A stretch of DNA of 64,000 nucleotides, taken from Camelus dromedarius. Its lineage: Eukaryota. Of this stretch, positions 39,601 through 63,273 are shown piece after piece. The translations under genes and the position numbers were made by a program. The stretch spans positions 1,364,001 to 1,428,000 of the forward strand of contig NC_087462.1 in the NCBI RefSeq assembly GCF_036321535.1, given 5' to 3'. Within the stretch, counting starts at the first letter, position 1, and the number at the start of each line of letters is the position of its first letter. The notes under the pieces are model-generated. The model searched no databases. It saw nothing but the letters and a program-made list of their open reading frames with translations, and was not told the origin of the DNA.

Positions 39601-42600
39601 AGGAATGCTGGGAATGGTTCTTACCAATCTGGGTCAGGGGTTCTCCCCTGGGCGATCCCCCCAGGGGACACTGGGCAACACCTGGGGACGTCCGTGGCTG
39701 TCACGACTGCGGATGCCCCGGCATCAAGTGGGCAGGGTCAGGGGTGCCGGTCCGCCGGCCACAGTGCCCGGGACGCCCCCAGAGAGGGACCTGCTCGACG
39801 TCAGCAGTTTTGACGGGGAGACCCTCACTTAGGGAACAGCCCATTTGTTAAACTTCAGATCTCAGTCTTCTCAGAAGTTGTTAGGGCGAAAGGAATCCTA
39901 CAGGAAGAGCCAAAAAGCACTGAGTGCTTACCCAAGCCTGTCGTGACACTGGCTCGGGAACCGTCCCTAGCGCGGAAGCCAGCCACGCACACACCTCGCA
40001 GCCCGACGGGCCCCACAGCGTGGCGCTGGGTCTGACCGCAGGGAACTGCCATTTCTGAGGTCAGCAGCACTAGAGCACCCGCATCCCACACAGTTCAATC
40101 CTAACCACAGCTCACGTCCAGTTTCAAAGCATTACTCTACTGTTAGCCCTTGCTACCTGTGCGGGGCGCTGCTTCCGTGACCCCCGAAGATACCAAAGTC
40201 CTCAGATGCTCTAGTCCCTCGTATAAAAATGGCACAGATTTGCACACAACCTACACGCATCCACCCCTACACTTTATATCACCTCCAGATCACTGACCAT
40301 CCCGATACAACGCAAGTGCTATGTAAACAGCGGCCTGCATGCAGCGAATTCAAGTTTTGCTTTTTGGAATTTTCTGGAATTTTTTTCAGAAATATTTTCA
40401 TTCCACAGTTGGTGAATGCAGAACCCACAGGGACACACAGCTGACAGTACACAATTTAAACTGAATTTGTTTTTACAGTTCAGAAACTTCAGTTAAATAG
40501 GGTTGGAAATTTTGAGACCCAAGGGAAAACTCTCAGACATACCCCGGTACTGCCGGACCCAGCAGAGCCACGCCCGAGGGGAGGGCACCAGTCAGTACAC
40601 ACTGGAAGCCACCTCACTGCCATGGGCGGAGTAAAATAAACCGCGGCGCCTGCGCGCCCACTCGGGAGGGCTGGCAGCCCTGCGCCCCGTGCGCGCGGGC
40701 GGCGGCGGCGCTGCTGCGCCCCCAGGCAGGATGTGGGGCAGAACCCCAGCCTGTCCCTCGAGTTCTGCACGAGGAAAAAGTTCTCGAACTGATTCACCAG
40801 GAGAAGTATTTTCCCTTTTTCTTTAATAAACACTAGGCTTATCACAAAAAGTGATGGGTATAATTCTACAACTTAAAAAGACGGAAAGAAAAGGCTTTCC
40901 CCAAAATTCCAAAGGTACTCATAAGAACAGAATGTTAAGGGGGCAGGTGTAGCTCAGTGGTAGAGCGGGTGTTTAGCATGCATGAATGAGGTCATGGGTT
41001 CAATCCCCAGAACCACCATTAAAAAACAAACAAACCTAATTACCATCCCCAAAAATAAAAAAAAAAGGAAATGTTAAAACTGTTTGGTCTTTTTCCTAGT
41101 CATACGCAAGTTTTAGAAGCAAGGACATTAGCAAGTGAATTTCCTCTACCTGCCAACACGATTCCTGCCCCATCTTAAGGATTAAAAAAACTCAAGCACC
41201 AAGAAAAACACGTGAATTAGACCACTGTTAAAGTCTGTTCTCCATGGTAACCCAACTCATACACACGCACACACCTGGTATCATAAGCTGAAACAAGAGT
41301 TTCAAAAACAAGTTATTCTGCCTGCAGTCCTGGGTTTTCTAGTTTCTTCTTTGGGGCACCCACAGAAGCCTACAGCAGTCACTCTTGCACTCTCATAAAG
41401 CCCTCAGCAAGGTGGGGAGGCTGGTGGCTGCTGCCTGCACTTTCCATTGGGGGCTCTCCCCAGGTCACCCAAACAGGCCCAAGAACTTGGACTTGGCTCT
41501 CCCAAACATCATACACTAAATCACCCTGCCTTTCCACTGGGCTTTTAAAGTCATAATTAAGCCTCATCTCTTCGGTGCCACATAGAAGTTTCAAGCTAAA
41601 ATCCACTACAAAAAGTAAACTTTGGGGGAAAACTATACTGCTGCCAGTAGCCTTTCCTGGGGCTCGGCGGGGGTGGGGGGGATCTCAGAGAGAAGGGAGC
41701 CAGAAGAGAAACTCAATAGCCATGGCCGAGCATCTGCAACCAGAAGGGACACCCCAGCAAGGATTCTCCATGGCACAACTCTTCTATTGAGGAAACCACG
41801 CCAGCCGGCACCCAGAGGCACCTCCTGCGGCCATCATCAACAGGCCAAGGGCAGGACTCACGTGGAAACCTGGCCTTGAGGACTTGCAGCATCCCCCACC
41901 TCCACCACCCAAAGCCCCCTCAATGGGCTCCCAGCCTGGGGGCGATGACGCCACCAGTTCCCACCAATTCCAGGGGGAGGAGGGTACAGCTCAGCAGGAG
42001 AGTGAGTGCTCAGTATGCACAAGGTCCTGGGTTCAACCACTAAAAATAATAACTAAATAAACCTAATTACCTCCTCCCCCAAAATATTTAAATAAAAATA
42101 AAAATTCCCACTAATTCCACATGAATAAAGCTCGGCTCAGGGCACTACCAGGGAGAATGGGCCAATGTTCCTGAAAAAACAGATGCCCCACCTGAGTGTG
42201 CGATTCTCGCCTGAAAAGACCCCTTGGCCCCTCCTCAAAATACCCACAACAGTCTGCTCAGTACATCCGCTGACAGAGGGGACATCAGGAGGTCAACCAG
42301 GGCAGAAAAAAATCTAAGGGTGCAAACATCACCCAAACTCACTTAGCCACACTCAGTAACCAAAATGCAGGCCAACCACATACTCTTCCAACTCACAAAG
42401 AAACTAAAGGCCAGGGTAAGTGTGAGCTATAGCCAACGCAGCTGGCCAGAGCTTCCAACACAATGCAAAACCCAGGTGTTGCCAGAAGACAATGGGGGAT
42501 GGAAATGAACTAAAATAACCTAATTACATTTCAGCGAGGTCACACCCATTCTGAAAAAGTGCAACAAAGAAGCAAGAATTCAGGTTCCCGGCACAAGGGC

Positions 42601-43719
42601 AGAGCCAGGGGCTCTCGGTGCCTCCCAGCAAATTCCTGAACTTCTCTGCACCTCCACCCAGTGATGCTGGACCCCCGGGGGCGCCCTTGTGAAGAGGGCC
42701 GGGTGACATCTGGCAGTGGGACCTGCACCACATCAAACAGCTGCTCTCCACCAAAGAGAGGACTCCAGCCGAGAAAGGGGACTTGTGCAGCCATCGGCCT
42801 CCTTCCATGGAAGCTGGCAGCCTGGTGGCCACTAACTGTCCCCATTCCCCCTAAATCTAGGTCACACGTTGGGGGTGGGGGTGGGGGAGGGAGAAAAATG
42901 GTGCCCACCATTGCATTATTACTTCTGTAAAACCTTTCCTCCCCGGCTTCGAGTTTCTAGTTGAAGTTGGCTTCCCTATTCCAGGACCCCTGAGCAGCTT
43001 CCTTATTTTGGCCTAGGATGTCTGCCGCCCTCCTCCCAATAAGAGGGGTGGCCGCACCTTCCGGGGGACACGGGCCCAGGAGGCAAGACCCAGTTCCGGG
43101 CCAGGCATCAGGGAGTGACCTGAACGTGGGTTTAACCCATAAGGGGTTCCGTCCGGGGGCGGCCCGCGGAGAGGAGGGTCCCCCCAACCAGGTGCCCAGG
43201 GCCTGGGGCGTGGCCCCTTAGACATCCAGCAACACACTCAATATTGGAGAGCCGCCGCTCCGGGGTGGGGGGGCCTGCCAAGTCGTCCGAGGCCATCCGC
43301 GGGGAGGAGGCGGCGAGCCCCCATCGCCGAGCGGGTAAACCGAGGTTCGGGGAGGCAGCCCACTCAGCGGCAGGCTCCCCAGGCGCTCCGATACATACGT
43401 GGGTCCAAAACCCGCGGCTCGGGTGCCTTCGGGCCTCGGGGATAAACCGAGCCTCGGGGAGGGCGCGGGCGTGCGGAAGCCCAGGCCGCGGGCAGGCGGG
43501 GCTCGAGTCTGGAGCGGAGCCTCGGGGACGGGCTGGGGGCCAGAGTCAGGGGCAGAGAGGGGATCGGGAACCGAGTCGCGGTCAGGGTGGGGGTCCGGGC
43601 CGCGGTCGGCGCGCCGAGCTCACCTCGTCCTCCTTGTGGTTGCGGATACCGCGCACCAGATCCTGCAGATTCTTGTCAAACATGCGGTCGATGCTGCCCT
43701 TGACCATCTTGAGGGCCAT
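9664..43719 (-). CDS. AP3D1: AP-3 complex subunit delta-1 (1205 aa, 32 coding exons)
   Basis: Exons in transcript order: 43624-43719, 31520-31615, 30936-31016, 29894-29974, 28452-28559, 26882-27011, 26184-26323, 25994-26067, 24763-24812, 23499-23548, 23040-23088, 22127-22272, 21903-22051, 21526-21756, 20823-21054, 19833-19978, 19304-19445, 18724-18795, 18045-18120, 17525-17724, 17095-17168, 16784-16961, 16412-16468, 15737-15841, 14732-14875, 14477-14524, 13997-14186, 13817-13905, 13631-13716, 12975-13096, 12790-12869, 9664-9759. Total 3618 nt with an open frame. Translation MALKMVKGSIDRMFDKNLQDLVRGIRNHKEDE...adaptin N-terminal trunk...LLEEMKGTLAQC* matches delta-adaptin. Confidence 0.97.
10860..12700 (+). 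mobile_element. Degenerate L1 fragment (ORF2 5' region) in the last AP3D1 intron
   Basis: A-rich purine strand with L1 ORF2-like motifs (AATTAACCCATGGGTCAAAGAGGAA..TAGAAAATATTCTGAACTG; AAAAGATCAACAAAA..AAGCCTC); no intact ORF. Confidence 0.65.
13235..13565 (+). mobile_element. MLT1A/B solo LTR
   Basis: TATGTTGAAGCCCTGACCC...GACTGTATTTGGAGACAG..CCCTAATCCAGCATGAC...GAGAGGCCTCAGAAGGA..CAGCCTCCAG. Confidence 0.75.
15130..15610 (+). mobile_element. L1MB-type 3' fragment (copy A)
   Basis: GC-shifted version of the L1MB 'agccagacacaaaaggac...gtccagaataggc...gttctggaactagatagtggtgatggttgcacaactctgtgaat' segment. Confidence 0.75.
31625..31650 (+). repeat. A26 homopolymer (T26 polypyrimidine tract of the AP3D1 exon 2 acceptor)
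   Basis: Directly visible; begins 9 nt from the exon 2 boundary at 31615. Confidence 0.9.
31680..31860 (+). mobile_element. L1MB-type 3' fragment
   Basis: Same L1MB segment (ACGTCCAGAACAGGCCAGTCCACAGACACAG...TTTTGGGGTGATG). Confidence 0.65.
33900..34400 (+). mobile_element. Degenerate L1 ORF1 fragment
   Basis: Translation AETSPNLVEDISLQIQDAQRLPQT resembles the L1 ORF1p motif ENFPNL.KD..IQIQEAQRTP. Confidence 0.65.
34980..35640 (+). mobile_element. Tigger2-like TcMar DNA transposon remnant
   Basis: CTTTATTGCTAAGAAACACTAACCATCATCAGAGCC and GAGAATTACCCAAATGTGACAC...TATCTGCAAAGC...GAGGTGTCTGTA terminus. Confidence 0.6.
36085..36760 (-). mobile_element. L1MB-type 3' end, GC-shifted
   Basis: TTTTAAGAGCAGTTTTAGGTTCACAGCAAAATTGAG...CATCCCCCACCAG...GATGAACC matches the recalled L1MB3 terminus in antisense. 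Confidence 0.75.
37990..38170 (+). mobile_element. MER20-like element
   Basis: GTGCCCCCAGGGGA...CAGTGGTTGTCACAACTTGGGGGG core. Confidence 0.6.
38760..39545. mobile_element. MER21-like ERV LTR remnant
   Basis: CAGCTGGGTGTGGCACAACTCAGTCCAGTTCTGACACT; TTTACGGAGGCTTCATCAC; GGGTCTGAAAGTTCCAA; CAGGAACTGGGGGCAGAGACCAA resemble the recalled MER21 family. Confidence 0.5.
39628..39830 (+). mobile_element. MER20-like element
   Basis: CAGGGGTTCTC...CCCCCCAGGGGACACTGGGCAACACCTGGGGAC..GGCTGTCACGACT..GGCATCAAGTGG. Confidence 0.7.
40145..40450 (-). mobile_element. Tigger4/MER46-like TcMar MITE
   Basis: AATTCAAGTTTTGCTTTTTGGAATTTTCTGGAATTTTTTTCAGAAATATTTT and TTTGCACACAACCTACACGCATCC match the recalled Tigger4b in antisense. 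Confidence 0.65.
40939..41069 (+). mobile_element. Vic-1-type tRNA-Ala-derived SINE
   Basis: A box TAGCTCAGTGGTAGAG, B box GGTTCAATCCC, AAACCTAATTACC tail, A-rich end, target-site duplication AATGTTAA (40931-40938 / 41070-41077). Confidence 0.85.
41973..42104 (+). mobile_element. Vic-1-type SINE
   Basis: tRNA-like head, AAATAAACCTAATTACCTCC tail, target-site duplication TTCCCAC(C/T)AATTCCA (41958-41972 / 42105-42119). Confidence 0.85.
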
Positions 43720-44260
43720 CGCGGCGGCTGCCGCCCGGCTCGAGCCCCGGGAGGCCCGCGGCCGGGAGCCCTGAGGGGGCCCGGTGGCCGCGCCTTCCGC
43801 CCGAGAAAGCGCTGCGCTGCCGGCCGCCGCGGCGGGGCGGGCTCCCAGGCCAGGTCGGCGGCGGTCAGCAGGGCAGCGGCGGCGGCGGCGGGGACCGCTC
43901 GGCAGGCCGCGTTCCCCTTCTCTCCGGCTCCGCGCCGCTCCGCTTGCAAATGGCGGACAAGATGGCGGCCAGTCAGCTGACGGCAGGAGCCCCGGCCGGC
44001 CCGCCCGCCCCCGGAAGCCCCGCCTCCCGGGAAACCCCGCCCCTCCACCGGGACCCCGCGTTTCCCTGACGACGCCAGACCGCCCAATGGAAACGCAGAC
44101 AACGGCCTCAGTGCCCACTAGGCCGCGCCCCCTCCGGCACAATCCTCTTTCACCTCATTGGTCAGTGGCCTTTGGAACTCCACCCACTTCCTGGTTCCGG
44201 CCTGTAACCACGCCTGCTAGGAGGCACCCTCCCTGCCCTGCTAAGTGACAGGTGTGGGCG
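43240..44260 (-). promoter_or_regulatory. AP3D1 CpG-island promoter with YY1, CCAAT and ETS-like motifs
   Basis: CpG-dense block around exon 1. Tandem AAATGGCG and AAGATGGCGGC (YY1 consensus) at about 43948-43969, CCAAT at about 44084, ATTGG at about 44158, CACTTCC at about 44185. Confidence 0.8.
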
Positions 44261-44349
44261 GGCCTATCTATGGGAGGGCCCTGCTATGGGCGGGGCGCCC
44301 ACGTGGAGCTTCCAAGGCAAGATTCCTGGTGGAAGAACCCAGCTCCGCC

Positions 44350-44580
44350 CCTTTCTTTTCTTTTCTTTTCTTTTTTTTTCTTTTTCTTTCTTTATTATTT
44401 TTAATTGAAGTAAATGTTGTAATGAAAGTACATGAAGTAAATGTTACAATGTTGTGTTAGTTTCTGGTGTACAGCATAGTGATTCAGTTACACATACATA
44501 TTCCTTTTCATTATAGGTTATCGCAGGATATTAATATAGTTCTCTGTGCTCTAACGTAGGGCCTTGTTGTTTATTAGCTC
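44350..44580 (-). mobile_element. Laurasiatherian/artiodactyl L1 3' end with poly(A) tail
   Basis: T-rich tail followed by TTAATTGAAGTA..ACAATGTTGTGTTAGTTTCTGGTGTACAGCATAGTGATTCAG..ATAGGTTAT..AATATAGTTC. Confidence 0.75.
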
Positions 44581-44734
44581 CACCCTTTCTGATTCCAAAA
44601 GCTGAGGGTGTCTGAGCACCGCCAAATCCGACTCTGCAGCAAATCCATCCTGTGTCTCTGGCATGTTGCACAAAATCCTGTGAGATGAGCAGCACGGGGA
44701 TTAACATGCCCACGTGGGGTAACTGAGCCCAGTC

Positions 44735-44835
44735 ATTCATTCAACGAATATTTATTGAGAGCCTACTATGTGCCAGGCCTGGCAAGTGAATGAGATACGC
44801 TTGGTTCCTGCCTTCCCGGATCCACCTTTAAGAGA
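44735..44835 (-). mobile_element. L2 3' end
   Basis: TTCATTCAACGAATATTTATTGAGAGCCTACTATGTGCCAGGC. Confidence 0.75.
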
Positions 44836-44839
44836 GTGA

Positions 44840-47800
44840 AGAATCAAGCCACAAACTAGGATAAGATATTAGCAAGACATATATCTGACAAAGGACTTAT
44901 AGCCACAATATAGTTAAACAGTAAATAAAACAGAACCAAACAAAAATTCCTACAAATTACAAAGAAAAAGACAACCCAGTTAAAATGTGGCAAAAGATTG
45001 TGAATACACACTTCACCAAAGAAGACACTCAAATGGCCAATAAGTATAGTAAAAGATGCTCTACCTCAGTCATCAGAGAAATGTAAGCTTAAACCACACT
45101 GAGCAGGGAGGGTATAGCTCGGTGGTAGAGTGTGTGCTCAGCATGCACAAGGTCCTGGGTTCAATCCCCAGCACCTCCTCTAAAAATAAATAAATCTAAT
45201 TACCTCCCTCCCTGACAAAATAAAAATAACTAAATAATACAATGATAAATAAACCTAGTTACCTCCTCAGAAAAACACACTGAGATATTTCTGTAACCCA
45301 AAAGAATGGCTAAAATTAGAAAGATTGATGGTATCAAGTTTTACAAAGATATGGAGCTCTCCTCTTTTACCCTTCAGGTGGGAACGTAAAACCACACAGC
45401 TACATTGGAAGCCTGTCTGACCGTATCTTTTAAAGTTAATATATGTATACCCTCTGACCCAGCAACTCCATCACTGTCCTCAACAAAAATGCATAAATTC
45501 ATCCACCGAAGACTTGGACAAGAATGTTCACAGTAGCTGTCTTTGTATGAGCCAAAAACTCAAAACGACTGACATGTCCATCAACAAAAAATGGATATGT
45601 AATTAGTGGTCTACCCAAAACACAGAATACCGTGCAGCATTAGAACAAAATACTAAGACACAGAACCAAATGCATGAATTACACAGACACAATGTTGACC
45701 ATAATAAGCCAAACACAAGAGTGTACACAGCATGATTCTATAACGTGATGTTCAATTGCAGGCAAGATTAACCTATGGTGATGGACAAAGTAACTCATCA
45801 AAGGTTACACACCATACCAGAGTGAACTGGAAACTGCAGAAATAAATTCTGGCATATCCACGCAGTGGATTCCTGACCAGCTGTTTAAGAGAATGCAGTA
45901 GGTAGGTAACTCTATGGCAATTGCCCCCCTACTTTTAACAGCTGGACAAAACATATGAAACAATGGTTTTCAGAAAGCATACAGTGCAGAGAGAAGGGAC
46001 ACAAACAAGATGAGCCCTACAGCTGCCCCAGAATTCTGCCTGTAGGTGATACCCAGGCTGCAGGTCAGGGAGGGGAAACCTAAGCAGAACACAGAGGGTT
46101 TGTGGATTGAGGGAACAGAGATGGAAGACTGTGAGACTGGGAGATGAGGGGAGACAAGGTAGCTAGAATTTGGAGGGCAGAGTTCTGGAGAGCAGGGACC
46201 TATTCTGAGAAAGCACTCAAGTTTCCATAGGGTTCCTCTTGAGTCTTTGGATGAATGTCAGACAGTGCATGCATAAGCGGCCAGATAAAGAACGATGCTG
46301 GGGGAAGGGACAATCACTGAGCACTCACACAACGTGGGACTGCTTGGAGAACCTACTAGCAAAGGTGGAGAGAATTCATTGAGTATGAGGGGCGTTCTGC
46401 AGAAACCTCAGAAGACTCATGCCTCATTGTAGGGCTAAGCTAGCCCTAGAGTGAAATCTATTCCCAGTATTTTAAGTGGGTGACAGACTGGATCAGCAGA
46501 CACTTCCCCAGAGAAGATCCTGAATGACCAACAAGCACATGAAGAGATACTTAACATAATTAGTTATTAAGGAAATGCTCCCCAGTGGGATACCACAGTA
46601 TATGTATCAGAGAGATTAAATGAAAAAGTCTGTTAACACCAAGAATTGGTGAAGATGAGAGCAATTGAAACTTTGATGCATGGCTGGAATAAATGCAAAA
46701 TGGGACAATAACTTTGGAAAACAGTTTGGCAATTTGTTACAAAGTTAAAAATACATTTTCCATGTGATTTGGCCATTCTACTTTGGAGTATTTACCGAAG
46801 AGAAAGAAAACCTATTTCCAAACAGACTTGTATGCAAATGATCATATCACCTTTATTTACAAAAACCTCAAACTGGAAACAATTCAAATATCTATCAACA
46901 GGTGAATGGATTCAAAAAACAACACAAAAACTGTGTTATATCCATCCAGTGGAATAATACTCAACAACAAAAAGAGTGGAACTACTGGTACACCTAACAA
47001 CTTGGACGAATCTCAAAAGCTTCATACAAAGGGAAAGAGGCCAGACTCAAAACTCTACATGGTATGATTCCACTCTACAAAATTTTACGAAAAGGAAAAC
47101 AACACTGATAGAAAACGTAACAATGGTGGCCTAGAGGCAGGAGTGAGGGGAGTGTTGACTGCAGAGGGAGATAAGAACTTTGGGGTGGTGGAAATGTTCT
47201 GTAGTGTGTTCGTGGTGTAGTTACACAACCATTAAAAAAATTGCCAAAGCTCATCAAACCATAACCTAACAAGAAGTGAATTTAATGGCATGAAAGTATG
47301 CTGCAATAAAGCTGAGGGGGAAGTGCTATAAGTGGGGAAAAGGTGGAAAAAGATACACCATCCAAACACTAATCATAAGCAAGCTGGACTGGCTATGTTT
47401 CTATCAGGAAAGAACAGAATTCAAAACAAGAAATATTACTACGGACAAAGAAGGGCATTACACAATGTTGGAGGAGTCAGTTCATCCAGAGGACATCGTA
47501 ATCCTAAACACATAGGCCCCTAACAACGAGGTTCGAAATACACAAAGCAAAATTTGATAAAACTGAAAAGACAAGAGAGTCAAATCCACAATGATGGTTA
47601 GAGATTTCAACACCCCTTTCTCAATAATTAGTAGAATAAGTAGAAAATCAGTAAGGATATGGAAGACTCGAACAACACTATCAGCCGACCTGGTGTTTAC
47701 AGAGCACTCTGCCCCAAAACAGCGGTATGTACATTCTCTTCAAGTGCACGTGGAATATTCATCAAGATGGAGAGATAATATACTAGGTTATGAAATAAAA

Positions 47801-47900
47801 AGATTGAAATCATACAGAAGATGTTTCCTGACCACAGTGGAATTAAATTAGAAATCGTTAACATAAAGGTATCTGGAAAACCCAAAATATCCCTTTGTAA
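44840..47900 (+). mobile_element. Stack of L1 fragments (3' ends, 5' region, ORF2 endonuclease)
   Basis: L1 3'-region motifs at 44870-45790 and 46480-47310. Translations KRWKKIHHPNTNHKQAGLAMFLS and MVRDFNTPFS at 47330-47650 match the ORF2 endonuclease (GWKKI.HAN..QK.AGVAILIS; VGDFNTPL). Interrupted and degenerate. Confidence 0.75.
45104..45270 (+). mobile_element. Vic-1-type SINE with duplicated tail, nested in an L1 3' fragment
   Basis: GGGAGGGTATAGCTCGGTGGTAGAG...GGTTCAATCCCC; the tail motif occurs twice; flanking direct repeat CACACTGAG; the L1 sequence resumes after it. Confidence 0.88.
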
Positions 47901-48254
47901 TTAATACCTCAGGGGAGATAGTTTGGAAGTGTTTAACATCTGGCTTCTCCTTGTAGTTTGCTCTTAGATTTTAGTGTCTGTTGCATCTGTTGGTTTCAGA
48001 CTTGCTGGGACACTGCATACATTCTGGCTTTCGAATCTCATGGCCTTCTCCAAAACTCCTCAACCCCAGGCCCCATATCCCCTACCTGGAGGAAGCCACT
48101 GTTAACAATTAGGGGATGTCTTCTTCCAGACCATTCTCTTTGCATTACCACAGTTTAGTCTCTCCCTGTTCTATTTATGGGTAACTGCATTTTCATATAA
48201 ATGGGATCCACACTCTTGTCTTGTTTGCCTTCACTTATCTATACGTCTCGGATG

Positions 48255-48700
48255 CTGTGGTCGCCGGGATAACAGCCCTCAAATATGCCCACATCCTGGT
48301 CCTGGGACCTGTGGATGTGTCACCTCACAGGGGAGAGGGGACTTTGCAGGTGGGATTAAGTTAAGGCGCTGGGATGAGGGTGACCCTGGATTCCCAGGAG
48401 GTCCCGTGTCATCACAGGGTCCTCATCAGAGGGAGGTGGGAGGTCAGTCAGAGAGAAACGGGAGATGCCGCGCTGCTGGCGGTGAGGATGGAGGGAGGGG
48501 CCGCAAGCCAGGGATGTGGGGCCTCTAGAAGCTGGAGAAGGCGGGACCTGATTCTTCCCTGGAGCCTCCGGAGGGACTAGCCCTGCCCATGCCTGGATTG
48601 AGCCCAGGTCAGACTTGTGCCTTCAGAACTGTGCGAGGGTATTACGTACTGTTTTAAACCACTACGTTCGTGTGAATTCATTGCAGCAGCAATTCAGCCC
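48255..48700 (+). mobile_element. MLT1D-like solo LTR
   Basis: GGGACTTTGCAGGTGGGATTAAGTTAAGG...GTCATCACAGGGTCCTCA..GCCGCAAGCCAGGGATGTGGGG.CCTCTAGAAGCTGGAGAAGG..TGTTTTAAACCACT. Confidence 0.8.
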
Positions 48701-49315
48701 CATACAGATGGTTTTCTGCAATGGTTTGTGAGGCTGTCTGGTTTTCCGGTTTCACTGCTTTACTGACATTTTCTTACTTAACCTCTGGGTGCAAAAATAA
48801 GTTGTCTCCACGTTTCCCGCTTACCACCATTGTGGTATCACGACACAAGGGTGAGGGCTGTTCTGGGCAGAGGGGAAAGGAAAGCAAAGGCGGGAGGTGC
48901 TGAGCATCCTGGCAGGTCTGAGGCCACTCTGTGTGTCAGGGAAGTGGGGGGGCAAGAGGTGGGATCTGGGAGGGCAGCAGGGAAGGGGCTCTGGGTCCTG
49001 CAAAGAGGCATTGGGGGGGCAGGGTTTGTCCCCCTTGCCAAGCCCCAACAGGGCGGCACAAAGTCTCCTTCCTCCTTCATCCCAGACCCTCAGTGCAGGA
49101 TTTGGCATGTGATACAAGTCTGTGATGGATGGATGGGCATTTAGATGAGTGGTGCATTCGTTCCAGCCTGGCCGTCTAGGGCAGTGCCACCCCGTGGGGT
49201 CTCTGAACCCTGCTCTCCACCTGCCCCTTCCAGTGTGGCAGCCACTTGAAATGTGGCCGGGGGACAGAGAAACTGAATTTGAAACCTTACTTAAAATAGA
49301 ATATGATATTATTTA

Positions 49316-49456
49316 ATTTTTTATTTGGCTTTTTTTGGGGGGTGGGGAGAGGAAGTAATTAGGTTTATTTATTTATTTAATGGAAGTACTGGGCGCTGAA
49401 CCCAGGACCTCGTGCCTGCTAAGAACACGCTCTACCACTGAGGTATGCCCTCCCCC
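49316..49456 (-). mobile_element. Vic-1-type SINE
   Basis: Reverse complement of the same head and tail; flanking repeat AAAATAGAATAT; follows a MER3/MER33-like fragment (about 49212-49300). Confidence 0.85.
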
Positions 49457-49479
49457 TCAAAATAGAATATATTATTTAA

Positions 49480-50200
49480 AAAAAAACCCAGACAACAACA
49501 AGAGTGGGCAAGGATGTGAACGAATCAGAACCGTTGTGCACAGCAGGCGGGGATGAAAATGACGCAGCCGTGGTGGAGCACTCCTCAAACAGTTAAGCGT
49601 AAACTCCCCATATGACCCAGTGGGACCCAGTCCCGCTCCTGGTACGGACCCAGGAGAATCAAAAGCAAGGACAGGAAGAGACGTTTGCACACCTGTGTCC
49701 ACAGCGGCATGACTCACAGCAGCTTAAGGTGGAAACACCCCAAGTGTCCATAGACGGGTGAATATGCAAGCAGAGTGTGGAGCATCCCTGTAATGAAGCA
49801 CCACTCAGCCTCAGAAAGAAGGCGGTTCCGGCACCTGCTGCAGCGTGGATGGACCTTGAGGACGTGGAGCTCAGCGGGAGAACCCAGCGCAGAAGGACAC
49901 GCACTGACTGAGCCCACTCACAGGAGGTCCCTGGAGGAGTCACATCCACAGAGACAGAGAGCAGACGGTGGGGCTGGGGCTGGGGGAGGGGCTGGGGAGT
50001 CAGTGTTTCACGGGGACAGAGTTTCAGTTTGGGAAGATGAGGAAGCTCTGGAGACGGTGGTGGGGATGGGGGCACACCAGTGTGAGTGTGCTTAACGCCG
50101 CTGAGCTGTGCTCTCACAAACGGTTAAGATGGTAAATTTTATGTTTTTTTTTTCCTTTGGTAAATTTTATGTTTATGTATATTTTACCACATTAAAAATT
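49480..50200 (+). mobile_element. L1MA/MB 3' fragment, GC-shifted
   Basis: TGGCAAGGATGTG..CTCCCCATATGACCCAG..CCCAAGTGTCCAT..GAGTTTCAGTTTGGGAAGATGA..GGTTAAGATGGTAAATTTTATG. Confidence 0.75.
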
Positions 50201-50289
50201 AATGCATAAAAGTCTACAATGAATAAAATATCAACATGTTACTTGAAGACAGGCTCTGTACCTGCACTTGACCAATTCACCTCCTCTCC

Positions 50290-50720
50290 TCCCCCAATCC
50301 CAGCCGTGTGAGAGGCTGGTGAATGGACACACACAAATGTGTCCCTCCACACAGGGGAGCATTGCTCGGCCGTGAAAAGGAGAGAAGCCCTGACACTTGC
50401 TACCACGTGGACGGACCCTGAGAACACGACGCTCAGTGAGAGAAGCAGACACAGAAGGACACGCAGTGTGTGAGTCCATGGATGTGAGGCGTCCAGAACA
50501 GGCCAGTCCCCAGACACAGGGAGGGGGCTCCTGGCTGTCAGGGGCTGGGGAGGGGGATGGGAGGGTGATTATCAACGGGGACAGGGCTTCTTTTTGGGAT
50601 GTTCTGGAATTAGAGGTGCTGGTGGCACAACTGTGAGAATGTACTAAATACTCCTGAATTGTACACTTTACAGACTGTATTATATGGTACATAAACTGTA
50701 TCTCAAAAACCTCATTTAAA
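50290..50720 (+). mobile_element. L1MB-type 3' fragment (copy B)
   Basis: Same segment as copy A at 15.1-15.6 kb. Confidence 0.75.
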
Positions 50721-50730
50721 AAAATGACAG

Positions 50731-50815
50731 GCAGGTGGGTATAGCTCAGTGTTAGAGCGTGTGCTTAGCATACACAAGGTCCTGGGTTCAGTCCCCAGTA
50801 CCTCCATTAAAGAAA
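50731..50815 (+). mobile_element. Vic-1-type SINE (short form without extended tail)
   Basis: TATAGCTCAGTGTTAGAGCGTGTGCTTAGCA...GGTTCAGTCCCCAGTACCTCCATTAAAG; flanks AAAAAATGACA / AAAAAAGTGACA. Confidence 0.82.
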
Positions 50816-52503
50816 AAAGTGACAAACTTATTTCCCATACAGCTGGGCTGTGTTGGTGGTGTGTGTTTGATGACTGACTAAACAAAGGCGTGAACGCGTG
50901 ACTAGATGGGATGACACAAAAGCAGTCCATACTTATCAAGTGGTTGTTTAACCCGGATTAACTCCTTCTGACCTTACTGCCCCCCTGGGAGGAAATGACC
51001 CCACTTTCCAGATGAGGAAGCTGAGCCAGCAGAGCCTGGCTTCCCCTCAGCGGAGTCGTCCTCCTCCGGGAAGCCCCTCCTGACGGCCCTGGGCTCCGCA
51101 GGGGCGTGGTTGTTTAGCTCAGGATGGCTGACCAGACCCAAGACCAAAGGCAAGCTGACCACGTTCTGTGGGAGTTTTCACCCCCGAGACCCTCTTTTCT
51201 GAGGCTGAGAGACAGGAAGCAATGCTCCCAGGGTCACTGTGGCCAGCCTGGAGGTGGCGCCACGCTGGTGGGGGTGGGGCCGCCCCCGGGCCCAATGCCT
51301 GGTCCTGCTCCAAGGCGGGGGTGTGCCCAGCTGGGATCTCCAGCGAGGCCTCCTCCCCCTCCCACTGCAACCAGTGAGCTGATTGGCCCACCCTGTGGCC
51401 TCTGGCCACCTGTTGCTGTCTGTCATGGGGCCACCCTCCTCATGATCCATCCTGTGCACCAGGCCCAACACCGCAGCGGTGAGGTAAGATAGGCAGGGGG
51501 CGGCCTGGACAGAGGGGGTCCCTGGGGTCTGGGAGGGCATCCCTGAGGTCCACGGGGATCCCCAGCTCCGGTGGATGCCCCCAAACACACCTAGGGGCAT
51601 TGCCCCCCTGCCCATTGGGCCCCTCCCCCATGGCCTGCTCTGGCCCCAGGGAAGGGTCCTCTTTCTGCCCAGGGATGGGTCACACTGACACTGGAGCTAG
51701 AGGCACTGGTGACCCAGAAAAGCAAGGCTGTGGGGGCCAACAGACAGGTTTGACTCAAGCTCTGCACAACCTCTGGCTCCAGCTCTAGCCTCAGTTTCTT
51801 CATCTGTGAGATGGAAGCAGAGACAGTCAGAGGGGCGGGGACCCCAGCTTTGGGATCGGGAGGTCTGGGATCCCCTGCCCCTGTCCCTGCCTGTCACGGC
51901 CAGAGTGAGGCTGATCCTGGCTGCTGGGGCTTGAGCTCCTAGACTTAGGGGGTCCAGGGGGAGTGTGGGTGCCGGGAATGGCCGGTGAGGATGGTCCAGA
52001 GGGAGACCCCAGGGGGGGCAAAGGCCTGGGAGGGGCTGGGCCCCATGTTGGCCTGTCCTGCTGGCCTCAGGCACCAGATAAAAATAGTCCCTGGTCTCAG
52101 AGAACATGAGCCGACCCTGGGGCCAAGGGTTCTGGTTTGGGCTCCTTGCTCATCTCTGTGACCACGCGCAGGACCCAGCCCTCCCTGGGGCCCCAGCAGC
52201 CTCCCCATCCTGAATGCTCAGGGATGCTGGGGCCCCAAGGAGGCTGGCCTATCAGGAGGGGTCCTGGGGGGGTCAGGGAGAGTGCCTGGCAGAGGCTGCT
52301 GGCCTTGCCTTGCGTGAGTATGAATTTACCAAGTGAATGGGGCTCCAGGAAGGGGGCCAAGCAAGGCCTGTTGGGAGGGGCAGGTCGGAGCCCCCTCTCC
52401 CCAGGTCAGGCCCAGGCCCATAGCAGGAGCTCAGCAAATGTAGGCCGCCTCTTCCCCGTTCCCTCCAGCCTGACTCTGGACCTGCTGTTTCTCAGACGTC
52501 TCC

Positions 52504-55202
52504 ATGACAACCAGGGCCCTGGAGGAGCTGGATGGAGGCCTGGGCAGCTGCCAAGTGGACGAGGGCCTCTCTGCACTGGCTGACCCCTGCCCAGGCCAGC
52601 CGCGGGAGGACAGGGCTCCAGGTACCCCAGAGGGCGCCACAGAGTGCAGCCCACTTTCTGTTGAGCCAGGTGGCTCACCTTCAGAGACCAGGCCTTGGAC
52701 TCCCACCTTAGACTGGCTTAAACCGTGCTCTCCATTTCCACACTCTGTGCCCATTAAAGTCTTGGGGGGTGCCCATTAAAGCCTTGGGGGTTCATAAGGA
52801 GCCCAAAGAACACAGGTGCCGGGCCGCAGAGGTCAGGTTTAGAATCCCAGCTTGTCAGTGAAGTGCCGTGCACCTGTGTGCAAGTCTCAGTCTGTCTACT
52901 TTCAAATCTGTAAAACGGGAGCAGTTACCCAGCCCTCACCCAGCAGAACCCGGGGCAGGGTGGGGTCAGCCCGGGGGTTCCCATGACCTTCACTCTCCCT
53001 CTTTTCCCACCAACAGTGACACCCAGTCTGGCCGACTCCAACAGCTGGCCTCAGGTGAGTAGCCTGGGCCCTTGGGGTTCAGCCCAGGGTGCCCCTGGAG
53101 GACAGGATGTGCTGGCACTGACGGTGGATGTCTGCAGCCCATGGGAAGGGTTTGGTCCCCCTCGGAGGAAAGACTGGAAGGAAACTGCCAGGATGACATG
53201 TCGCTCTGCATAGGATTCTCAGGAGCCGGTAGCTGAGGGCAGCCCCGCAGGCGGTGTGGATGCCAGGCCCAAGAAGACAGAAAAGGAGCCGGTGGCCAAA
53301 GTGGCCTCAGGACACGGGAAGGAGAGGCTGAAAACAGGAGCAAGTGGGTTTGCCGGAGACAGGGGTGAGGCGGGGGGTGGGCTTGGACCAGTATTGGGTT
53401 GGGGGTCGATCCTGGGCCGGGTCCTTAGATGGGGAGTCAGTACCGTGCACGGGGCTCCTGGTGGAGTGACGTAACGAAACGGGCTGTGAGCCTCTGTAAT
53501 TCATGCTAACACCAGCTCAGGTGCTACTAAGCTTCAGCGAGTTATCTTTTAGAATATTTTCGGTATCCCAGCGGAGGTGCCAAGCCGGCAGAGCTTAGCT
53601 CCTCCGCGCAGGGCCGCACAGCCGGGCAGGGCGGGGCCGAGCGCAGCCGGGGCTCCGCCCCTGGCAGCCCGCGCCCATCCCGCACCCGCTCCCGCAGCCC
53701 CCCGGAGCCCCGCGCGGAAGAAGACGCAGGCCGTGCCGCCCCCGCAGCCGCCGCCGCCGCCCCCGGCCCTGAGCGAGGAGCTGCCCTGGGGAGAGCTGTC
53801 GCTCAACAAGTGCCTGGTGCTCGCCTCGCTCGTGGCGCTGCTGGGCTCCGCCTTCCAGCTGTGCCGCGGTGAGCTGCGCCCCACGCGTGGCTTCTTCCGG
53901 GGGGCCGGTCTGTGCGCCTCCCCTTCAGAGTTGGGTCTTGGACCCCCACCCCAGGCAGTGCGCGCCCCCTGCCCCCTAGTATGGACCTTGGGACCCGCCC
54001 CCTGCACTTCCTGCTCCGGCCTTATGCGCCCCCAGGGTGGCGTCTGAGACCCACTATTCAGGACCGGCTTTGAGCCTCGCGCGCGTCCCCAACACGGACC
54101 TTCCGCGGAGCCCTTCCCGTCGCAGTAGGGGCCTTGGTGCACCTCCCTCCCTGAGAAGAGGCCCTCAGCCCCGCCCCCACCGGCCTTGCACGCCCAGGAT
54201 GGGCTGTGTGCACCCCCACTCGGTAGTGTGCCGCTTTCCTTGCGCCGTGGCGCTCCTACCGCCCTCGGAGAAACGGGGAGCATCCTTTTGCTACCTGAAT
54301 GAGGGAGCTTTGAAGGAAAGGCCTCCGCCGTAGTGGAGACCCGGAGCCCCTTCCCAGGGCTCGGACGGATTCAGTCCAGCCTCAGGGTACCTGGTGGAGT
54401 CTGGCTTGGCTGAGCCCCCTTGCCTGTCCCCAGGAAGAGGGGGCTCTAGGGGAAAGGGCTGGGATGGACCGTGTGGTCGGCTCTCCGGCTCAGGCTGACT
54501 CACATCCCCTCCTGGCCCTTCCCAGAGGCCGTGGCTGGGGAAGCGGAAGCCCCTGTGCCTGTCCTTGAACCGTGCGTCCCGCCAAGCTCAGCCCCGAAGG
54601 GTCCTGCATCGGCCCTGGTAAGCACGTCCTTCAAGTGACCCGTCAGTGGGGCTCTCATTGGGGGAAGGGGCCTGGGCCCCCGTGGCATTCTGCTCTGACC
54701 CCACCACCCCACACTGTCCGCATTGCAGCCAAAGCCCGTGACCTGGGCTCCCCCACTGGGACCGCCTGCACCCCAGATGAAGGTAGAGGAAAGGGCCAAG
54801 GTCCCCGGGAGCAGGGAGGCTGCAGGGAAGGACAAAGGGGAGTCTGAGGAGGCCGCTGGGGAGGAGCCCGCGCCCCTTGCAGACCGAGGGCCCAAGGAGA
54901 GGTTGAAGGAGGGGCCGAAGAAGGAGAGGCTGCGGAAGGAGAGGCCTCAGAAAGAGGAGAGGCCAAGAAGGGAAGAGAGACCACGGAGGGAGAAGCCACG
55001 GAAAGAGGAGAGGCCACGGGCTGCCGGGGAGCCCCGGAGAGCCCTACCGCGGCATTGGGAGGCACGCAAAGGGGGCCATCAGCCATGGGCGCGAGACTCC
55101 GGAGACCCGGAGTACAGGAAGAAGCAGGCCTGGGCCTCCCCAGAGGAGGAGGACCGGCCTCCGGGCCGCCGGAAGCACCGCGCAGGCAAGGGGCGGGACT
55201 GA
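52504..55202 (+). CDS. JSRP1: Junctional sarcoplasmic reticulum protein 1 (JP-45), 340 aa
   Basis: Coding exons 52504-52621, 53017-53054, 53214-53343, 53698-53868, 54526-54617, 54729-55202 (1023 nt, GT-AG, in phase). Translation MTTRALEELDGGLGSCQ...ALSEELPWGELSLNKCLVLASLVALLGSAFQLCR (transmembrane segment)...KEERPR repeats...RAGKGRD* matches JSRP1. An acceptor at 52495 implies a non-coding upstream exon. Confidence 0.93.
52835..52950 (+). mobile_element. MIR fragment (others at about 50990-51030, 51785-51815, 63170-63270)
   Basis: GAATCCCAGCT...TCTCAGT..TTTCAAATCTGTAAAACGGG MIR core. Confidence 0.55.
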
Positions 55203-55265
55203 GCCAAGTCTGGCCCCACACGGGAGTTCCTGGGCCTCCGCTCGTCCGTCCCGTGGTTACAGCAA

Positions 55266-55271
55266 AATAAA
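55266..55271 (+). terminator. JSRP1 poly(A) signal AATAAA
   Basis: AATAAA 64 nt after the JSRP1 stop codon. Confidence 0.8.
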
Positions 55272-55466
55272 GTCAGTGCTGGGGCCCTCTTCATTGTCTG
55301 CTCTTTTGCGCCCGAACCCCAGAACCCACCCGGGGCCTGAGTAACAGGGATTGGGAGCTTCAGGTGGGGGTGGGGGCCAGAGTGCTGAGGGGGATGACAA
55401 CTGGCGGAAGGAAGCCCTGGCCTGTCTCCAACCACCACAGACACCCCAGCCACGTGCTTTCTGGTC

Positions 55467-55472
55467 TTTATT
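55467..55472 (-). terminator. AMH poly(A) signal AATAAA (minus)
   Basis: TTTATT on + strand, 57 nt past the AMH stop codon. Confidence 0.8.
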
Positions 55473-55528
55473 GGGGTGATGAAGGGGTCCAAATAAATAT
55501 GGGCCAGTGCGCCACTTGGGGCACAGGG

Positions 55529-58179: not shown

Positions 58180-58209
58180 TCTGGGTGCTTCCAGGGGCTG
58201 GGCTGCCCT

Positions 58210-58495: not shown

Positions 58496-58872
58496 GCCCC
58501 CAGGTCAGGGGTGGGGGCGGAGAGGGCCAGCGCTCCTGCCCCAGACGGCCGCGCACCAGCCCGAGGAAAACACATCACCCTCGCTCAGACCGCAGCCAGG
58601 CGCGCCTGGCGGGCCCCGCCCCTGCGTGCTGGCCCCCCACGCGCCCCAAAGGGGAGCGAGCAGCTACTGCTTTCCTCTGAGGAGAGCCCCAGACGCGCTG
58701 CTGGCTCGCAGGCTGCCCCACCCAGGGGCCACCCACTTGTGTCCTGCTGGTGTCCTGACCCTGGGCCACCTCCGAAGGTGCAGGAGGACACCTGTGTGTA
58801 TTCAGTCACTGCAAGCCCTTGCCCCGGCCTGCCCACTGACACAGCAGAACACTCCAGGGTCGGCACGGACTC

Positions 58873-61900: not shown

Positions 61901-62657
61901 CGAGCGCCCGTAAAGGCGGAGAAGATGAAGGTCCCAGATGTCTGCGACACAGGAAGTCTCGCCGAGGCTGCAGGTGCAGGTGTGGGCCCAGCTGGACTGT
62001 GGGCGCCGCCAGGCACCTGGCAGTGAGTCCACCTCCGTGATGCCCAGAGAGGGGATGCGCACACCAGCGGTTCTCAACTAGGGTTCTTCTGGCCCCCCGG
62101 GGAAACCGTGCCCACGGTGGCCCCCCAGAGGACAGCCAGCCCAGTGCCGCAGGGCAGACCCGCACACGTGAGACTGTTTAATTCAGTGCTGCAGCCCGCA
62201 GCTGAGAGCTGGACATAAACCAAGTCCTCACCGGCATGGTAGAGGACAGAGGAGACCAAATCTTAACCGAGGTAAGGAGCCCAGCGTGAGCGTGAGCGGT
62301 CATCAGACCACCCTGGGTGCTCAGAATGCTGACTAGGGCCAGAGCCACACCATGCAGGACAGAGGCTGGGGACAGCGGGGCTTGGGCCTCTGTCTGGAGT
62401 GACAGTGTCTCTCCTAGAAAGACACGTTTGAGCCGGGCCCCGCTGTGTCAGTGGCCACTTTCAGGCCACCCGCGCCTCACTGGGTAGTGACCCACATCTC
62501 AGGAGTGACAAGGCCAGCGGGGCAGAGCCAGGCTGTATGGGGAGGGGAGGGGACGGGCAGGGGGGACAGGGACGGGCAGACACACCTCATTGTTGTGCAG
62601 TGTCAGGCACAACTTGCACTCATACGAGCCCAGGTGGTTTTTCATGAAGTAAGGGTC
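58977..62657 (-). CDS. SF3A2: Splicing factor 3A subunit 2 (SAP62), 5'-partial; first coding exon lies beyond the window
   Basis: Exons 62586-62657 ([24 protein letters not shown]), 61750-61796 ([15 protein letters not shown]; U1C-type zinc finger), 61475-61584, 60523-60572, 60302-60442, 59887-59955, 58977-59798 (Pro-rich tail with 24 GVHPPAP-like heptads). All GT-AG and phase-consistent. Confidence 0.97.
59055..59570 (-). repeat. Coding 21-bp tandem repeat (24 GVHPPAP-type heptads) of SF3A2
   Basis: Counted in the translation; contains a perfect 42-bp duplication at 59219-59302. Boundaries approximate. Confidence 0.9.
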
Positions 62658-63273
62658 CTGAAAGGAAAGTACGTTTGTCAGACAAAGGGAGGTGGCCCTG
62701 CCGTGCTGGGTCCGCGGCGCCAAGGCCTCTTTCTGTCCGAGACGCATGGCTCACCCTTGGCTGGCACTGGGGGTCGTCCTCGAGGAGAGGGACAAGCAGG
62801 AGCCCTTAAGGCAGCAGCATGGCCCCTGGGATCCTGCAGAAACCTGGAGTCTACCCTGCCTGTCTGCACCCACAGCAAGCTCCAGGAGGGGGGTCCCCCA
62901 GGGAGCCCCTGACCCCACACTCATGGCGACCTGGGGTCAAGAAGGAGGCGGAGCTGAAACAGCACCGTGGCTCATCACCTCCCCCCAGGACAGGCCAGCA
63001 CTCCAAGTGCTGCAGCACAAGCCCGACATGGGCAGAGAGAAGCAACCAGGTCAAAGGCTGGAGAAGGCCCGCGTCCCTGCGTGCCCTGTCAGTGGGGTCG
63101 GGCTCCAGGGCTGACCAGTGGCGCCCCTGAGAGGGGCGGCGGGGCAGGCACTTCTGACCTCAGGTGTGGAGCTGACACCAGGGGTTCAAGTCCTCATTCC
63201 CCAACCCAGTGGCTGTACCATCTGTGCAATGACAGTCCCACCCCACCTAACTCTGTTTCCTCATCTAGAAAAT

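What the first reader, a model, noticed from the sequence alone, without database searches (positions are those of the whole stretch)
44260..52400. Gene order implies an inversion of the DOT1L-PLEKHJ1-SF3A2-AMH-JSRP1 block, with a breakpoint in this L1-dense interval
Seen in the sequence: IZUMO4(+), AP3D1(-), JSRP1(+), AMH(-), SF3A2(-), with no DOT1L sequence between AP3D1 and JSRP1. Recalled human and mouse order: IZUMO4(+), AP3D1(-), DOT1L(+), PLEKHJ1(-), SF3A2(+), AMH(+), JSRP1(-), OAZ1(+). A single inversion of DOT1L..JSRP1 explains the difference. Inference: both breakpoints fall between head-to-head gene pairs, so promoter partners are swapped. Housekeeping AP3D1 now faces muscle-specific JSRP1 about 8 kb away, and DOT1L should face OAZ1. 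The interval holding the junction is an AT-richer stack of L1, MLT1 and SINE fragments unlike its flanks. I cannot tell whether the inversion is camelid-specific, shared across artiodactyls, or whether this order is the ancestral one.
Basis: partly seen in the sequence, partly recalled or inferred. Interest (0 to 1): 0.7.

Follow-up and report, generated by a model that had tools for sequence, protein, structure and literature searches.

The report
Old inversion shared by even-toed ungulates
In the dromedary, the DNA block holding DOT1L, SF3A2, AMH and JSRP1 lies flipped compared with human; the flip is real but ordinary, because pig, deer and whale share it, while a bat and a badger keep the human-like order.

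Summary
The window is dromedary CM070336.1:1,364,001-1,428,000. It carries IZUMO4(+), AP3D1(-), JSRP1(+), AMH(-) and SF3A2(-). The AP3D1 and JSRP1 start codons are 8.8 kb apart, across an AT-rich stretch of L1 and SINE fragments.

- **Not camelid-specific, not an assembly error.** Gap-free loci from a deer, the pig reference and a baleen whale show the same head-to-head JSRP1/AP3D1 adjacency. They are collinear with the window at DNA level, including an old 5'-truncated L1 next to the AP3D1 CpG island.
- **Derived, not ancestral.** A bat and a badger have OAZ1 head-to-head with JSRP1, 7 kb apart, as in a human gene list. None of six outgroup loci contains the AP3D1 5' region.
- **Age.** The flip arose once, on the stem of Cetartiodactyla.
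- **Breakpoint.** The junction in this window lies between 44,357 and about 49,850.
- **Other junction.** DOT1L beside OAZ1 was not seen as sequence. Only a positional pig gene list supports it.

This is a new example of a known kind of event, visible in public annotations but, as far as I found, undescribed. Interest is low to moderate.

The parts
4705..5374 (+). IZUMO4 5' coding exons. The rest of the gene, to about 7 kb, was not mapped.
   Evidence: Pfam IZUMO PF15005, E 1.6e-4, on ORF 4705-5286(+). ORF 5087-5374(+) reads like IZUMO4 (by eye). The deer gene model fuses IZUMO and JSRP domains on one strand.
12718..43719 (-). AP3D1, from the exon encoding residues about 1099-1145 to the start codon. 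The last exons lie further left and were not mapped.
   Evidence: PDB 9rtx_d residues 1099-1145. PDB 9c58_D residues 1-33, with the ATG at 43,719-43,717.
43100..44356 (.). AP3D1 CpG island and promoter. It is conserved up to position 44,356 in deer, pig and whale.
   Evidence: GC 0.72 and CpG observed/expected 0.84 at 43-44 kb. Identity is 80-82.5% to L001 and L006; the alignments to L001, L005 and L006 all end at 44,356. No hit in six outgroup loci.
44357..44575 (.). Camel-only insertion: a pyrimidine microsatellite plus a short dispersed repeat.
   Evidence: Read. Absent at the orthologous point in whale, where L006 21690 and 21704 abut. Inverted copies occur elsewhere in L001 and L006.
44576..46374 (+). 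Old 5'-truncated L1 (C-terminal end of ORF2 plus 3' region), orthologous in camel, pig, deer and whale. Places 44730-44782 were not analysed.
   Evidence: PDB L1 ORF2p residues 1060-1104 at 44925-45083. Collinear matches to L001, L005 and L006. No match in the bat or badger OAZ1-JSRP1 interval.
45104..45271 (+). tRNA-derived SINE inserted into the old L1. Absent at this position in whale, pig and deer.
   Evidence: ARAGORN and Rfam tRNA hits at 45108-45180. The whale alignment is continuous across the gap 45103/45272.
46375..48269 (+). Further L1 ORF2 fragments with no counterpart in the other species' loci. These look like lineage-specific insertions.
   Evidence: PDB L1 ORF2p residues 1153-1223 at 46712-46954. 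ORFs at 47294-47848 read as the L1 endonuclease region by eye only (no hit). No matches.
48270..48602 (.). Dispersed repeat, MLT1-like from memory. It may be the positional counterpart of a badger element in the OAZ1-JSRP1 spacer.
   Evidence: 70% identity to L011 6334-6572 in collinear orientation. 85.6% identity to a second camel copy at L007 2101-2364, and 83% to whale L006 2562-2828.
49662..52503 (+). JSRP1-proximal part of the ancestral OAZ1-JSRP1 spacer, including the JSRP1 promoter (CpG-poor). Homology to outgroups ends at its left edge.
   Evidence: Collinear with rhino from 49,662, meerkat from 49,802, badger from 49,846 and whale from about 49,830-49,950. CpG observed/expected 0.2 at 51-53 kb.
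52504..55202 (+). JSRP1
   Evidence: Pfam JSRP, E 2.3e-17. First-exon ORF with MTTRALEELDGG.... Identical to the annotated 340-aa gene in L007.
55529..58179 (-). AMH
   Evidence: Pfam AMH_N and TGF_beta. PDB 9ban and 7l0j.
58977..63054 (-). SF3A2. The last exon and the zinc-finger exon were mapped; the 5' end was not.
   Evidence: PDB 6qx9 and 5z56 residues 24-67. Collinear with the SF3A2 models in L001 and L003-L007.

Best explanation
The window shows one junction of a fixed chromosomal inversion of roughly 90 kb that flipped the block DOT1L-PLEKHJ1-SF3A2-AMH-JSRP1. It arose once, on the stem lineage of Cetartiodactyla, before camels, pigs, ruminants and whales separated.

It broke two spacers between head-to-head gene pairs: AP3D1|DOT1L and JSRP1|OAZ1. 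They were rejoined as AP3D1|JSRP1, seen here, and DOT1L|OAZ1, inferred. No gene was cut.

The junction in this window lies between 44,357 and about 49,850. Right of about 49.7 kb is the old JSRP1-side spacer. Left of 44,357 is the AP3D1 CpG-island promoter. Most of what lies between is retrotransposon sequence: one old L1 shared by all cetartiodactyls, and later L1 and SINE insertions not found in the pig, deer and whale loci, which stretch the camel spacer to 8.8 kb against about 6.5 kb in whale, deer and pig.

Shown: the adjacency, its collinearity across species, and the ancestral state in outgroups. Inferred: a single event, the second junction, the block size, and neutrality.
For: **Gene identities and strands.**

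**Source of the window.** It is 100% identical over 18,472 bp to Camelus dromedarius GCA_036321535.1 CM070336.1.

**Same adjacency in other cetartiodactyls.**
- Deer L001: SF3A2(+), AMH(+), JSRP(-), then an AP3D1(+) model starting 9.8 kb after AMH.
- Whale L006: an AP3D1(+) model 6.5 kb from JSRP1(-).
- Pig L005 reaches the edge of the AP3D1 promoter: window 44178-44356 matches L005 22654-22472.

**DNA collinearity.** AP3D1 island, old L1, JSRP1 upstream region and JSRP1 follow in the same order in all three. There are no N runs in L001, L005, L006 or L007.

**Ancestral state.**
- Bat L008: OAZ1 (PF02100, -) lies 7.2 kb from JSRP1(+).
- Badger L011: OAZ1(-), with Antizyme_FSE at 86.5 bits, lies 6.9 kb from JSRP1(+).
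- Bat and badger are collinear across the whole spacer.
- Cetartiodactyl homology stops at badger about 7754, while badger 4230-5527 stays conserved with bat but is absent from the cetartiodactyl loci.
- The AP3D1 5' region is absent from six outgroup loci.

**Gene lists.** Human PMC5110597; pig PMC9375371, which is positional.

**Reproducibility in camel.** 20 runs from 9 studies hold at least 93% of the sampled 31-mers of 43600-52600.
Against: - The second junction (DOT1L|OAZ1) was never seen as sequence. The pig list omits OAZ1, PLEKHJ1 and SF3A2.
- The sheep list (PMC8085236) is interleaved with other genes and is not strictly positional.
- No outgroup AP3D1 upstream sequence could be fetched, so the AP3D1-side limit of the breakpoint is unknown.
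- Rhino and vole loci show no OAZ1 within 10 kb of JSRP1, so their state is inferred from collinearity only.
Confidence: 0.9

Rival explanations
1. Assembly artefact: the dromedary contig was misjoined or a segment misoriented inside the repeat-rich 44-52 kb interval.
For: The interval is full of L1 and SINE repeats. Read-level spanning evidence could not be obtained.
Against: The same adjacency appears in gap-free sequence of three other species' independent assemblies, collinear through the junction and including a shared old L1. The window has no Ns. 20 runs from 9 studies hold at least 93% of its 31-mers.
Confidence: 0.01
2. The camel order is ancestral for placental mammals, and the human, mouse, bat and carnivore order is the derived one.
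For: None directly. Only a few outgroups were sampled, and no afrotherian, xenarthran or marsupial locus was examined.
Against: Cetartiodactyla is nested inside Scrotifera (established phylogeny). Bat, carnivore and human share OAZ1|JSRP1. This polarity would therefore need at least three independent identical inversions against one.
Confidence: 0.03
3. A more complex history than one inversion: two overlapping inversions, or an inversion plus transposition or duplication, that happens to give the same AP3D1|JSRP1 junction.
For: Only one junction was seen. The repeat at 48.27-48.60 kb is oddly similar (85.6%) to a copy upstream of SF3A2 inside the block, which could hint at local duplication or gene conversion.
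Against: The positional pig list shows the whole block simply reversed between PEAK3 and AP3D1, with the flanking genes in unchanged order. The internal order and orientation SF3A2>AMH<JSRP1 is intact in every species.
Confidence: 0.06

Closest known systems
Clade-specific fixed microinversions in mammalian genomes, used as rare genomic changes (for example the class surveyed by Chaisson, Raphael and Pevzner 2006; recalled from memory, not read here)
   Same: A sub-megabase segment is flipped and fixed in a whole clade. The breakpoints lie in intergenic, repeat-rich DNA. Gene content is unchanged and the outgroups keep the other orientation.
   Different: At about 90 kb it lies between the classic microinversions (typically far smaller, by my recollection) and cytogenetically visible rearrangements. 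Both breaks fall between divergently transcribed gene pairs, so four promoters change neighbours.
Cetartiodactyl and ruminant evolutionary breakpoint regions from chromosome-scale comparisons (for example the Farré et al. work on ruminant breakpoints; recalled from memory, not read here)
   Same: A lineage-specific rearrangement dated to the cetartiodactyl stem, with transposable elements enriched at the junction.
   Different: Those maps use synteny blocks of hundreds of kilobases, by my recollection, so an event of this size would be below their resolution. I found no paper naming it.
Inversions made by recombination between inverted repeats (L1-L1 or segmental-duplication mediated)
   Same: An L1 sits directly at the junction.
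   Different: No matching L1 was found in the ancestral OAZ1-JSRP1 spacer of bat or badger. The second junction is unseen, so the defining pair of inverted repeats is not shown.

Membership tests
Fixed lineage-specific chromosomal inversion | Order and strand of a contiguous gene block are reversed relative to the flanking genes when compared with outgroups | tested here: met
   Camel: AP3D1(-), JSRP1(+), AMH(-), SF3A2(-). Bat and badger: OAZ1(-), JSRP1(+), AMH(-), SF3A2(-). Human list.
Fixed lineage-specific chromosomal inversion | The same junction is present and orthologous in several species of the clade, in independent assemblies | tested here: met
   Deer L001, pig L005 and whale L006 are collinear with the window through the AP3D1 island, a shared L1 and the JSRP1 upstream region. 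All are gap-free.
Fixed lineage-specific chromosomal inversion | Outgroups carry the uninverted junction at the orthologous place | tested here: met
   OAZ1|JSRP1 spacer in bat L008 and badger L011. Cetartiodactyl homology ends inside it at L011 about 7754.
Fixed lineage-specific chromosomal inversion | The reciprocal second junction (DOT1L|OAZ1) exists in the clade | not testable with these tools
   No cetartiodactyl OAZ1 or DOT1L locus could be fetched. The search for OAZ1 representatives returned only bird, fish, rodent or unnamed clusters. The only support is the pig gene list PMC9375371.
Assembly misjoin or misorientation | A gap or N run at the junction, or an arrangement unique to one assembly | tested here: not met
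   No N in the window. The arrangement is shared by four assemblies.
Inversion by recombination between inverted repeats | Homologous repeats in opposite orientation at both ancestral breakpoints | tested here: inconclusive
   An old L1 lies at the junction, but nothing like it is found in the bat or badger OAZ1-JSRP1 spacer. The AP3D1-DOT1L spacer of outgroups and the second junction were not available.

The most novel reading that the evidence does not exclude
The inversion is a clean molecular synapomorphy of Cetartiodactyla. By exchanging divergent-promoter partners (AP3D1 with JSRP1, DOT1L with OAZ1) and moving the AMH-SF3A2-DOT1L block relative to its flanking regulatory landscape, it changed the expression of one of these genes in the clade. 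One possibility is muscle JSRP1 or AP3D1 sharing elements across the 6-9 kb spacer.
Probability: 0.08. Interest if true: 0.5.

Novelty: new member of a known kind. Interest (0 to 1): 0.3.

Why it matters
- **Clade marker.** It is a rare genomic change present in camel, pig, deer and whale and absent in bat, badger and human. That makes it an independent character for cetartiodactyl monophyly that includes camelids.
- **Annotation and liftover.** Projecting human or mouse gene order onto this locus fails in livestock genomes. The deer annotation already fuses IZUMO4 and JSRP1 into one model across AP3D1.
- **Livestock genetics.** The locus holds AMH, a fertility marker in cattle, and DOT1L, so fine-mapping work there should know that the neighbourhood differs from human.
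- **Limits.** Functionally it is probably neutral. No gene is interrupted, and each gene keeps its own proximal promoter.

Tried and rejected
- **Read laying on 44001-50000 with four runs from four studies.** They were replaced by N in my local scripts, and the Rfam search started at 44783.
- **Earlier scan notes.** The words DOT1L and OAZ1 occur in none. The tool does not take places beyond the window. A word search gave only unrelated inversions.
- **Look-ups that found nothing.** Hippo AMH isoform and Myotis AMH are not on record.
- **Reaching the second junction through OAZ1.** I searched with a bat OAZ1 exon for representatives and then listed cluster members. This gave only bird, fish, rodent or unnamed clusters and no cetartiodactyl OAZ1 id.
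- **Pfam on L1 fragments.** No hit. PDB sequence search identified two of three pieces.
- **PLEKHJ1 just right of the window (L007 1-4600).** No recalled motif and no CpG island were found, so the rightward prediction stays untested by sequence.
- **Sheep gene list.** It is compatible, but interleaved with 5q31 genes, so I do not use it as positional evidence.
- **Literature.** Four searches found no description of the inversion.
Full report
**1. What is in the window**

The window has no assembly gaps. From 45,529 to 64,000 it is 100% identical to Camelus dromedarius GCA_036321535.1, CM070336.1 (locus L007). That places the window at 1,364,001-1,428,000 of that record, in record orientation.

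- **IZUMO4(+).** A weak Pfam IZUMO match (E 1.6e-4, below the gathering score) on 4705-5286.
- **AP3D1(-).** The start codon is at 43,719; residues 1-33 match PDB 9c58_D. Residues 1099-1145 lie at 12.7-13.1 kb and match PDB 9rtx_d.
- **JSRP1(+).** Pfam JSRP, E 2e-17, on 53553-54044. From the ORFs I read the ATG at 52,504 and the stop at 55,200-55,202.
- **AMH(-).** It runs from 58,179 to 55,529, with AMH_N and TGF_beta domains and matches to PDB 9ban and 7l0j.
- **SF3A2(-).** The zinc-finger exon is at about 62.6 kb (PDB 6qx9) and the Pro-rich last exon at 58,980-59,798.

The two start codons that face each other, AP3D1 and JSRP1, are 8,785 bp apart.

**2. The interval between them**

AP3D1 sits in a CpG island (GC 0.72, CpG observed/expected 0.84 at 43-44 kb). 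The JSRP1 promoter is CpG-poor (0.2). GC falls to 0.40-0.44 at 44-48 kb, against about 0.60-0.68 on both sides. The pieces are:
- two L1 ORF2 fragments on the + strand, at 44925-45083 (ORF2p residues 1060-1104) and 46712-46954 (residues 1153-1223);
- further L1-like ORFs at 47.3-47.85 kb, recognised by eye only (no hit);
- tRNA-derived SINE heads at 45108-45180 and 50735-50806, and a further SINE copy at 49338-49463;
- a dispersed repeat at 48,270-48,602 that I take for MLT1 from memory.

**3. Is the arrangement real, and who shares it?**

I fetched the AMH or JSRP1 neighbourhoods of other mammals from public assemblies (for protein ids; for loci).

| Species | Locus | What is seen |
|---|---|---|
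| Yarkand deer | L001 | SF3A2(+), AMH(+), JSRP(-), then an AP3D1 model (+) that starts 9.8 kb after AMH |
| Rice's whale | L006 | An AP3D1 model starts 6.5 kb from JSRP1, head-to-head |
| Pig reference | L005, NC_010444.4:76,405,575-76,428,235 | The locus ends just as it reaches the AP3D1 promoter edge (DNA match) |

At DNA level all three are collinear with the window through the junction:
- Window 43443-44356, the AP3D1 island, is 82.5% identical to whale and 80% to deer. Pig covers 44178-44356.
- All three alignments stop at exactly 44,356.
- They resume at 44,576 with an old 5'-truncated L1: 44576-45730 in whale and pig, and to 46,374 in deer.
- They continue from about 49.95 kb in whale, 50.2 kb in pig and 50.0 kb in deer into JSRP1, AMH and SF3A2.

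The following have no counterpart in the pig, deer or whale loci:
- the 219-bp insert at 44357-44575;
- the SINE at 45104-45271;
- most of 46.4-49.7 kb.

These explain why the spacer is 8.8 kb here and about 6.5 kb in the others.

None of the four cetartiodactyl loci contains an N. This rules out a dromedary misassembly. The adjacency predates the split of camels, pigs, ruminants and whales.

In addition, 20 sequencing runs from 9 studies of the same organism hold at least 93% of the sampled 31-mers of 43600-52600. That shows the content is reproducible, not that it is contiguous.

**4. Which state is ancestral?**

- In the bat Molossus molossus (L008), an antizyme gene (Pfam ODC_AZ; its first exon reads [21 protein letters not shown]...) lies on the opposite strand 7.2 kb upstream of JSRP1. 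AMH and SF3A2 follow as usual.
- In the badger Meles meles (L011), the same antizyme gene lies 6.9 kb upstream of JSRP1. It carries the Rfam antizyme frameshift element at 86.5 bits.
- Bat and badger are collinear across the whole OAZ1-JSRP1 spacer.
- Cetartiodactyl homology to the badger runs from JSRP1 only as far as L011 about 7754, which corresponds to window 49,846 and whale 18,893.
- The OAZ1-proximal part of the spacer, badger 4230-5527, is conserved with bat but absent from the cetartiodactyl loci.
- Meerkat (L003) and rhino (L004) stay collinear with each other beyond the point where cetartiodactyl homology stops. In window coordinates that point is 49,802 for meerkat and 49,662 for rhino. 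Meerkat also stays collinear with the badger up to the end of L003.
- The AP3D1 5' region (43400-44356) hits only the three cetartiodactyl loci and none of six outgroup loci.
- A human CNV table lists AP3D1, DOT1L... PLEKHJ1... SF3A2, AMH, JSRP1, OAZ1, LINGO3 (PMC5110597).

Cetartiodactyla is nested within the group that also holds bats, carnivores and perissodactyls (established phylogeny). One inversion on the cetartiodactyl stem therefore explains everything. The opposite polarity needs at least three identical events.

**5. Is it a single inversion?**

Inside the block, the order and orientation SF3A2>AMH<JSRP1 is unchanged in every species examined.

A pig CNV table that is otherwise strictly positional reads GADD45B, LMNB2, TMPRSS9, SPPL2B, LSM7, LINGO3, PEAK3, DOT1L, AMH, JSRP1, AP3D1, IZUMO4, MOB3A, MKNK2 (SSC2 76.01-76.54 Mb; PMC9375371). 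This is the human order with only DOT1L..JSRP1 reversed, and it agrees with the coordinates of L005.

A sheep list is compatible but not strictly positional (PMC8085236).

I could not obtain the DOT1L|OAZ1 junction as sequence (look-ups exhausted). 'DOT1L now faces OAZ1' therefore remains a well-supported inference, not an observation.

**6. Where is the breakpoint, and how did it form?**

The junction lies between 44,357 (end of the conserved AP3D1 island) and about 49,660-49,850 (start of outgroup-conserved JSRP1 upstream sequence).

The repeat at 48,270-48,602 matches a badger element at L011 6334-6572 in collinear order at 70% identity. If the two are orthologous, the limit moves left to about 48.27 kb. 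However, the camel copy is 85.6% identical to another camel copy upstream of SF3A2, so orthology is uncertain.

I recall that the canonical human AP3D1 and DOT1L starts are about 12 kb apart, not a tight bidirectional promoter. On that recollection, part of 44.4-48 kb may be old AP3D1-side spacer. That cannot be tested without an outgroup AP3D1 upstream sequence.

The shared L1 abuts the AP3D1 island in all cetartiodactyls. No similar L1 exists in the bat or badger OAZ1-JSRP1 spacer. Nothing here shows that L1-L1 recombination made the inversion. Simple breakage and rejoining, with the L1 present before or inserted after, is at least as likely.

**7. Consequences**

No gene is interrupted, and each keeps its proximal promoter. 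AP3D1 keeps its CpG island and JSRP1 its CpG-poor promoter. What changed is the neighbour across each divergent spacer and the position of the block relative to the flanking landscape.

A regulatory effect is possible but untested. My default reading is a neutral, fixed rearrangement.

**8. Novelty and verdict**

The event is visible in public annotations and implicit in published gene lists. Four literature searches found no description of it. It is a new example of a well-known kind of event, useful as a clade marker and as a caution for annotation transfer. Interest is low to moderate.

**9. Limits of this work**

I worked beside those places afterwards and sent none of their letters to any search tool.
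- No afrotherian, xenarthran or marsupial locus was examined.
- The state in rhino and vole is only 'no OAZ1 and no AP3D1 within 10 kb'.
- The size of the inverted block (about 90 kb) is recalled from human coordinates, not measured here.

Noticed in passing
window 48312-48579; L007 2101-2364 (about window 65.8-66.1 kb, beyond the right end): The MLT1-like repeat in the junction interval is 85.6% identical to a second camel copy upstream of SF3A2, and 83% to the whale copy at that second place. It is only 70% identical to the badger element at the collinear position. That is closer than two independent ancient copies should be, which hints at a local duplication or gene conversion.
   Followed up: partly
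L001 11338-20990 (Cervus hanglu yarkandensis CM021200.1): The deer annotation has one 511-aa gene model carrying both IZUMO and JSRP Pfam domains and spanning AP3D1 on the other strand. It is a fusion artefact of IZUMO4 with JSRP1, possible only because the inversion put the two genes on the same strand.
   Followed up: no
L004 17.8-18.4 kb, 21.46-21.88 kb and 22.57-22.85 kb (white rhinoceros JH767828.1): Parts of the JSRP1 upstream segment occur up to three times in rhino, in direct and inverted orientation. One copy is 91% identical to whale. This is either a rhino-specific local duplication or inversion, or a problem in that older assembly.
   Followed up: no
window 59050-59600 (-): The SF3A2 last exon contains a long, internally repetitive proline-rich array. 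It aligns to itself and to the other species in many registers.
   Followed up: no
window 43945-43975: The AP3D1 core promoter carries the sequence 'caaatggcggacaagatggcggcc', which looks like tandem YY1-type AAGATGGCGGC motifs. This is recalled from memory and not tested.
   Followed up: no
window 44444-44574; L006 17352-17498; L001 15712-15865: The camel-only insert next to the AP3D1 island belongs to a repeat family. Whale and deer have a copy of it, in the opposite orientation, just upstream of JSRP1. These are independent insertions of the same family on both sides of the spacer.
   Followed up: no
They lie inside the old L1 and were left out of all later searches.
   Followed up: no
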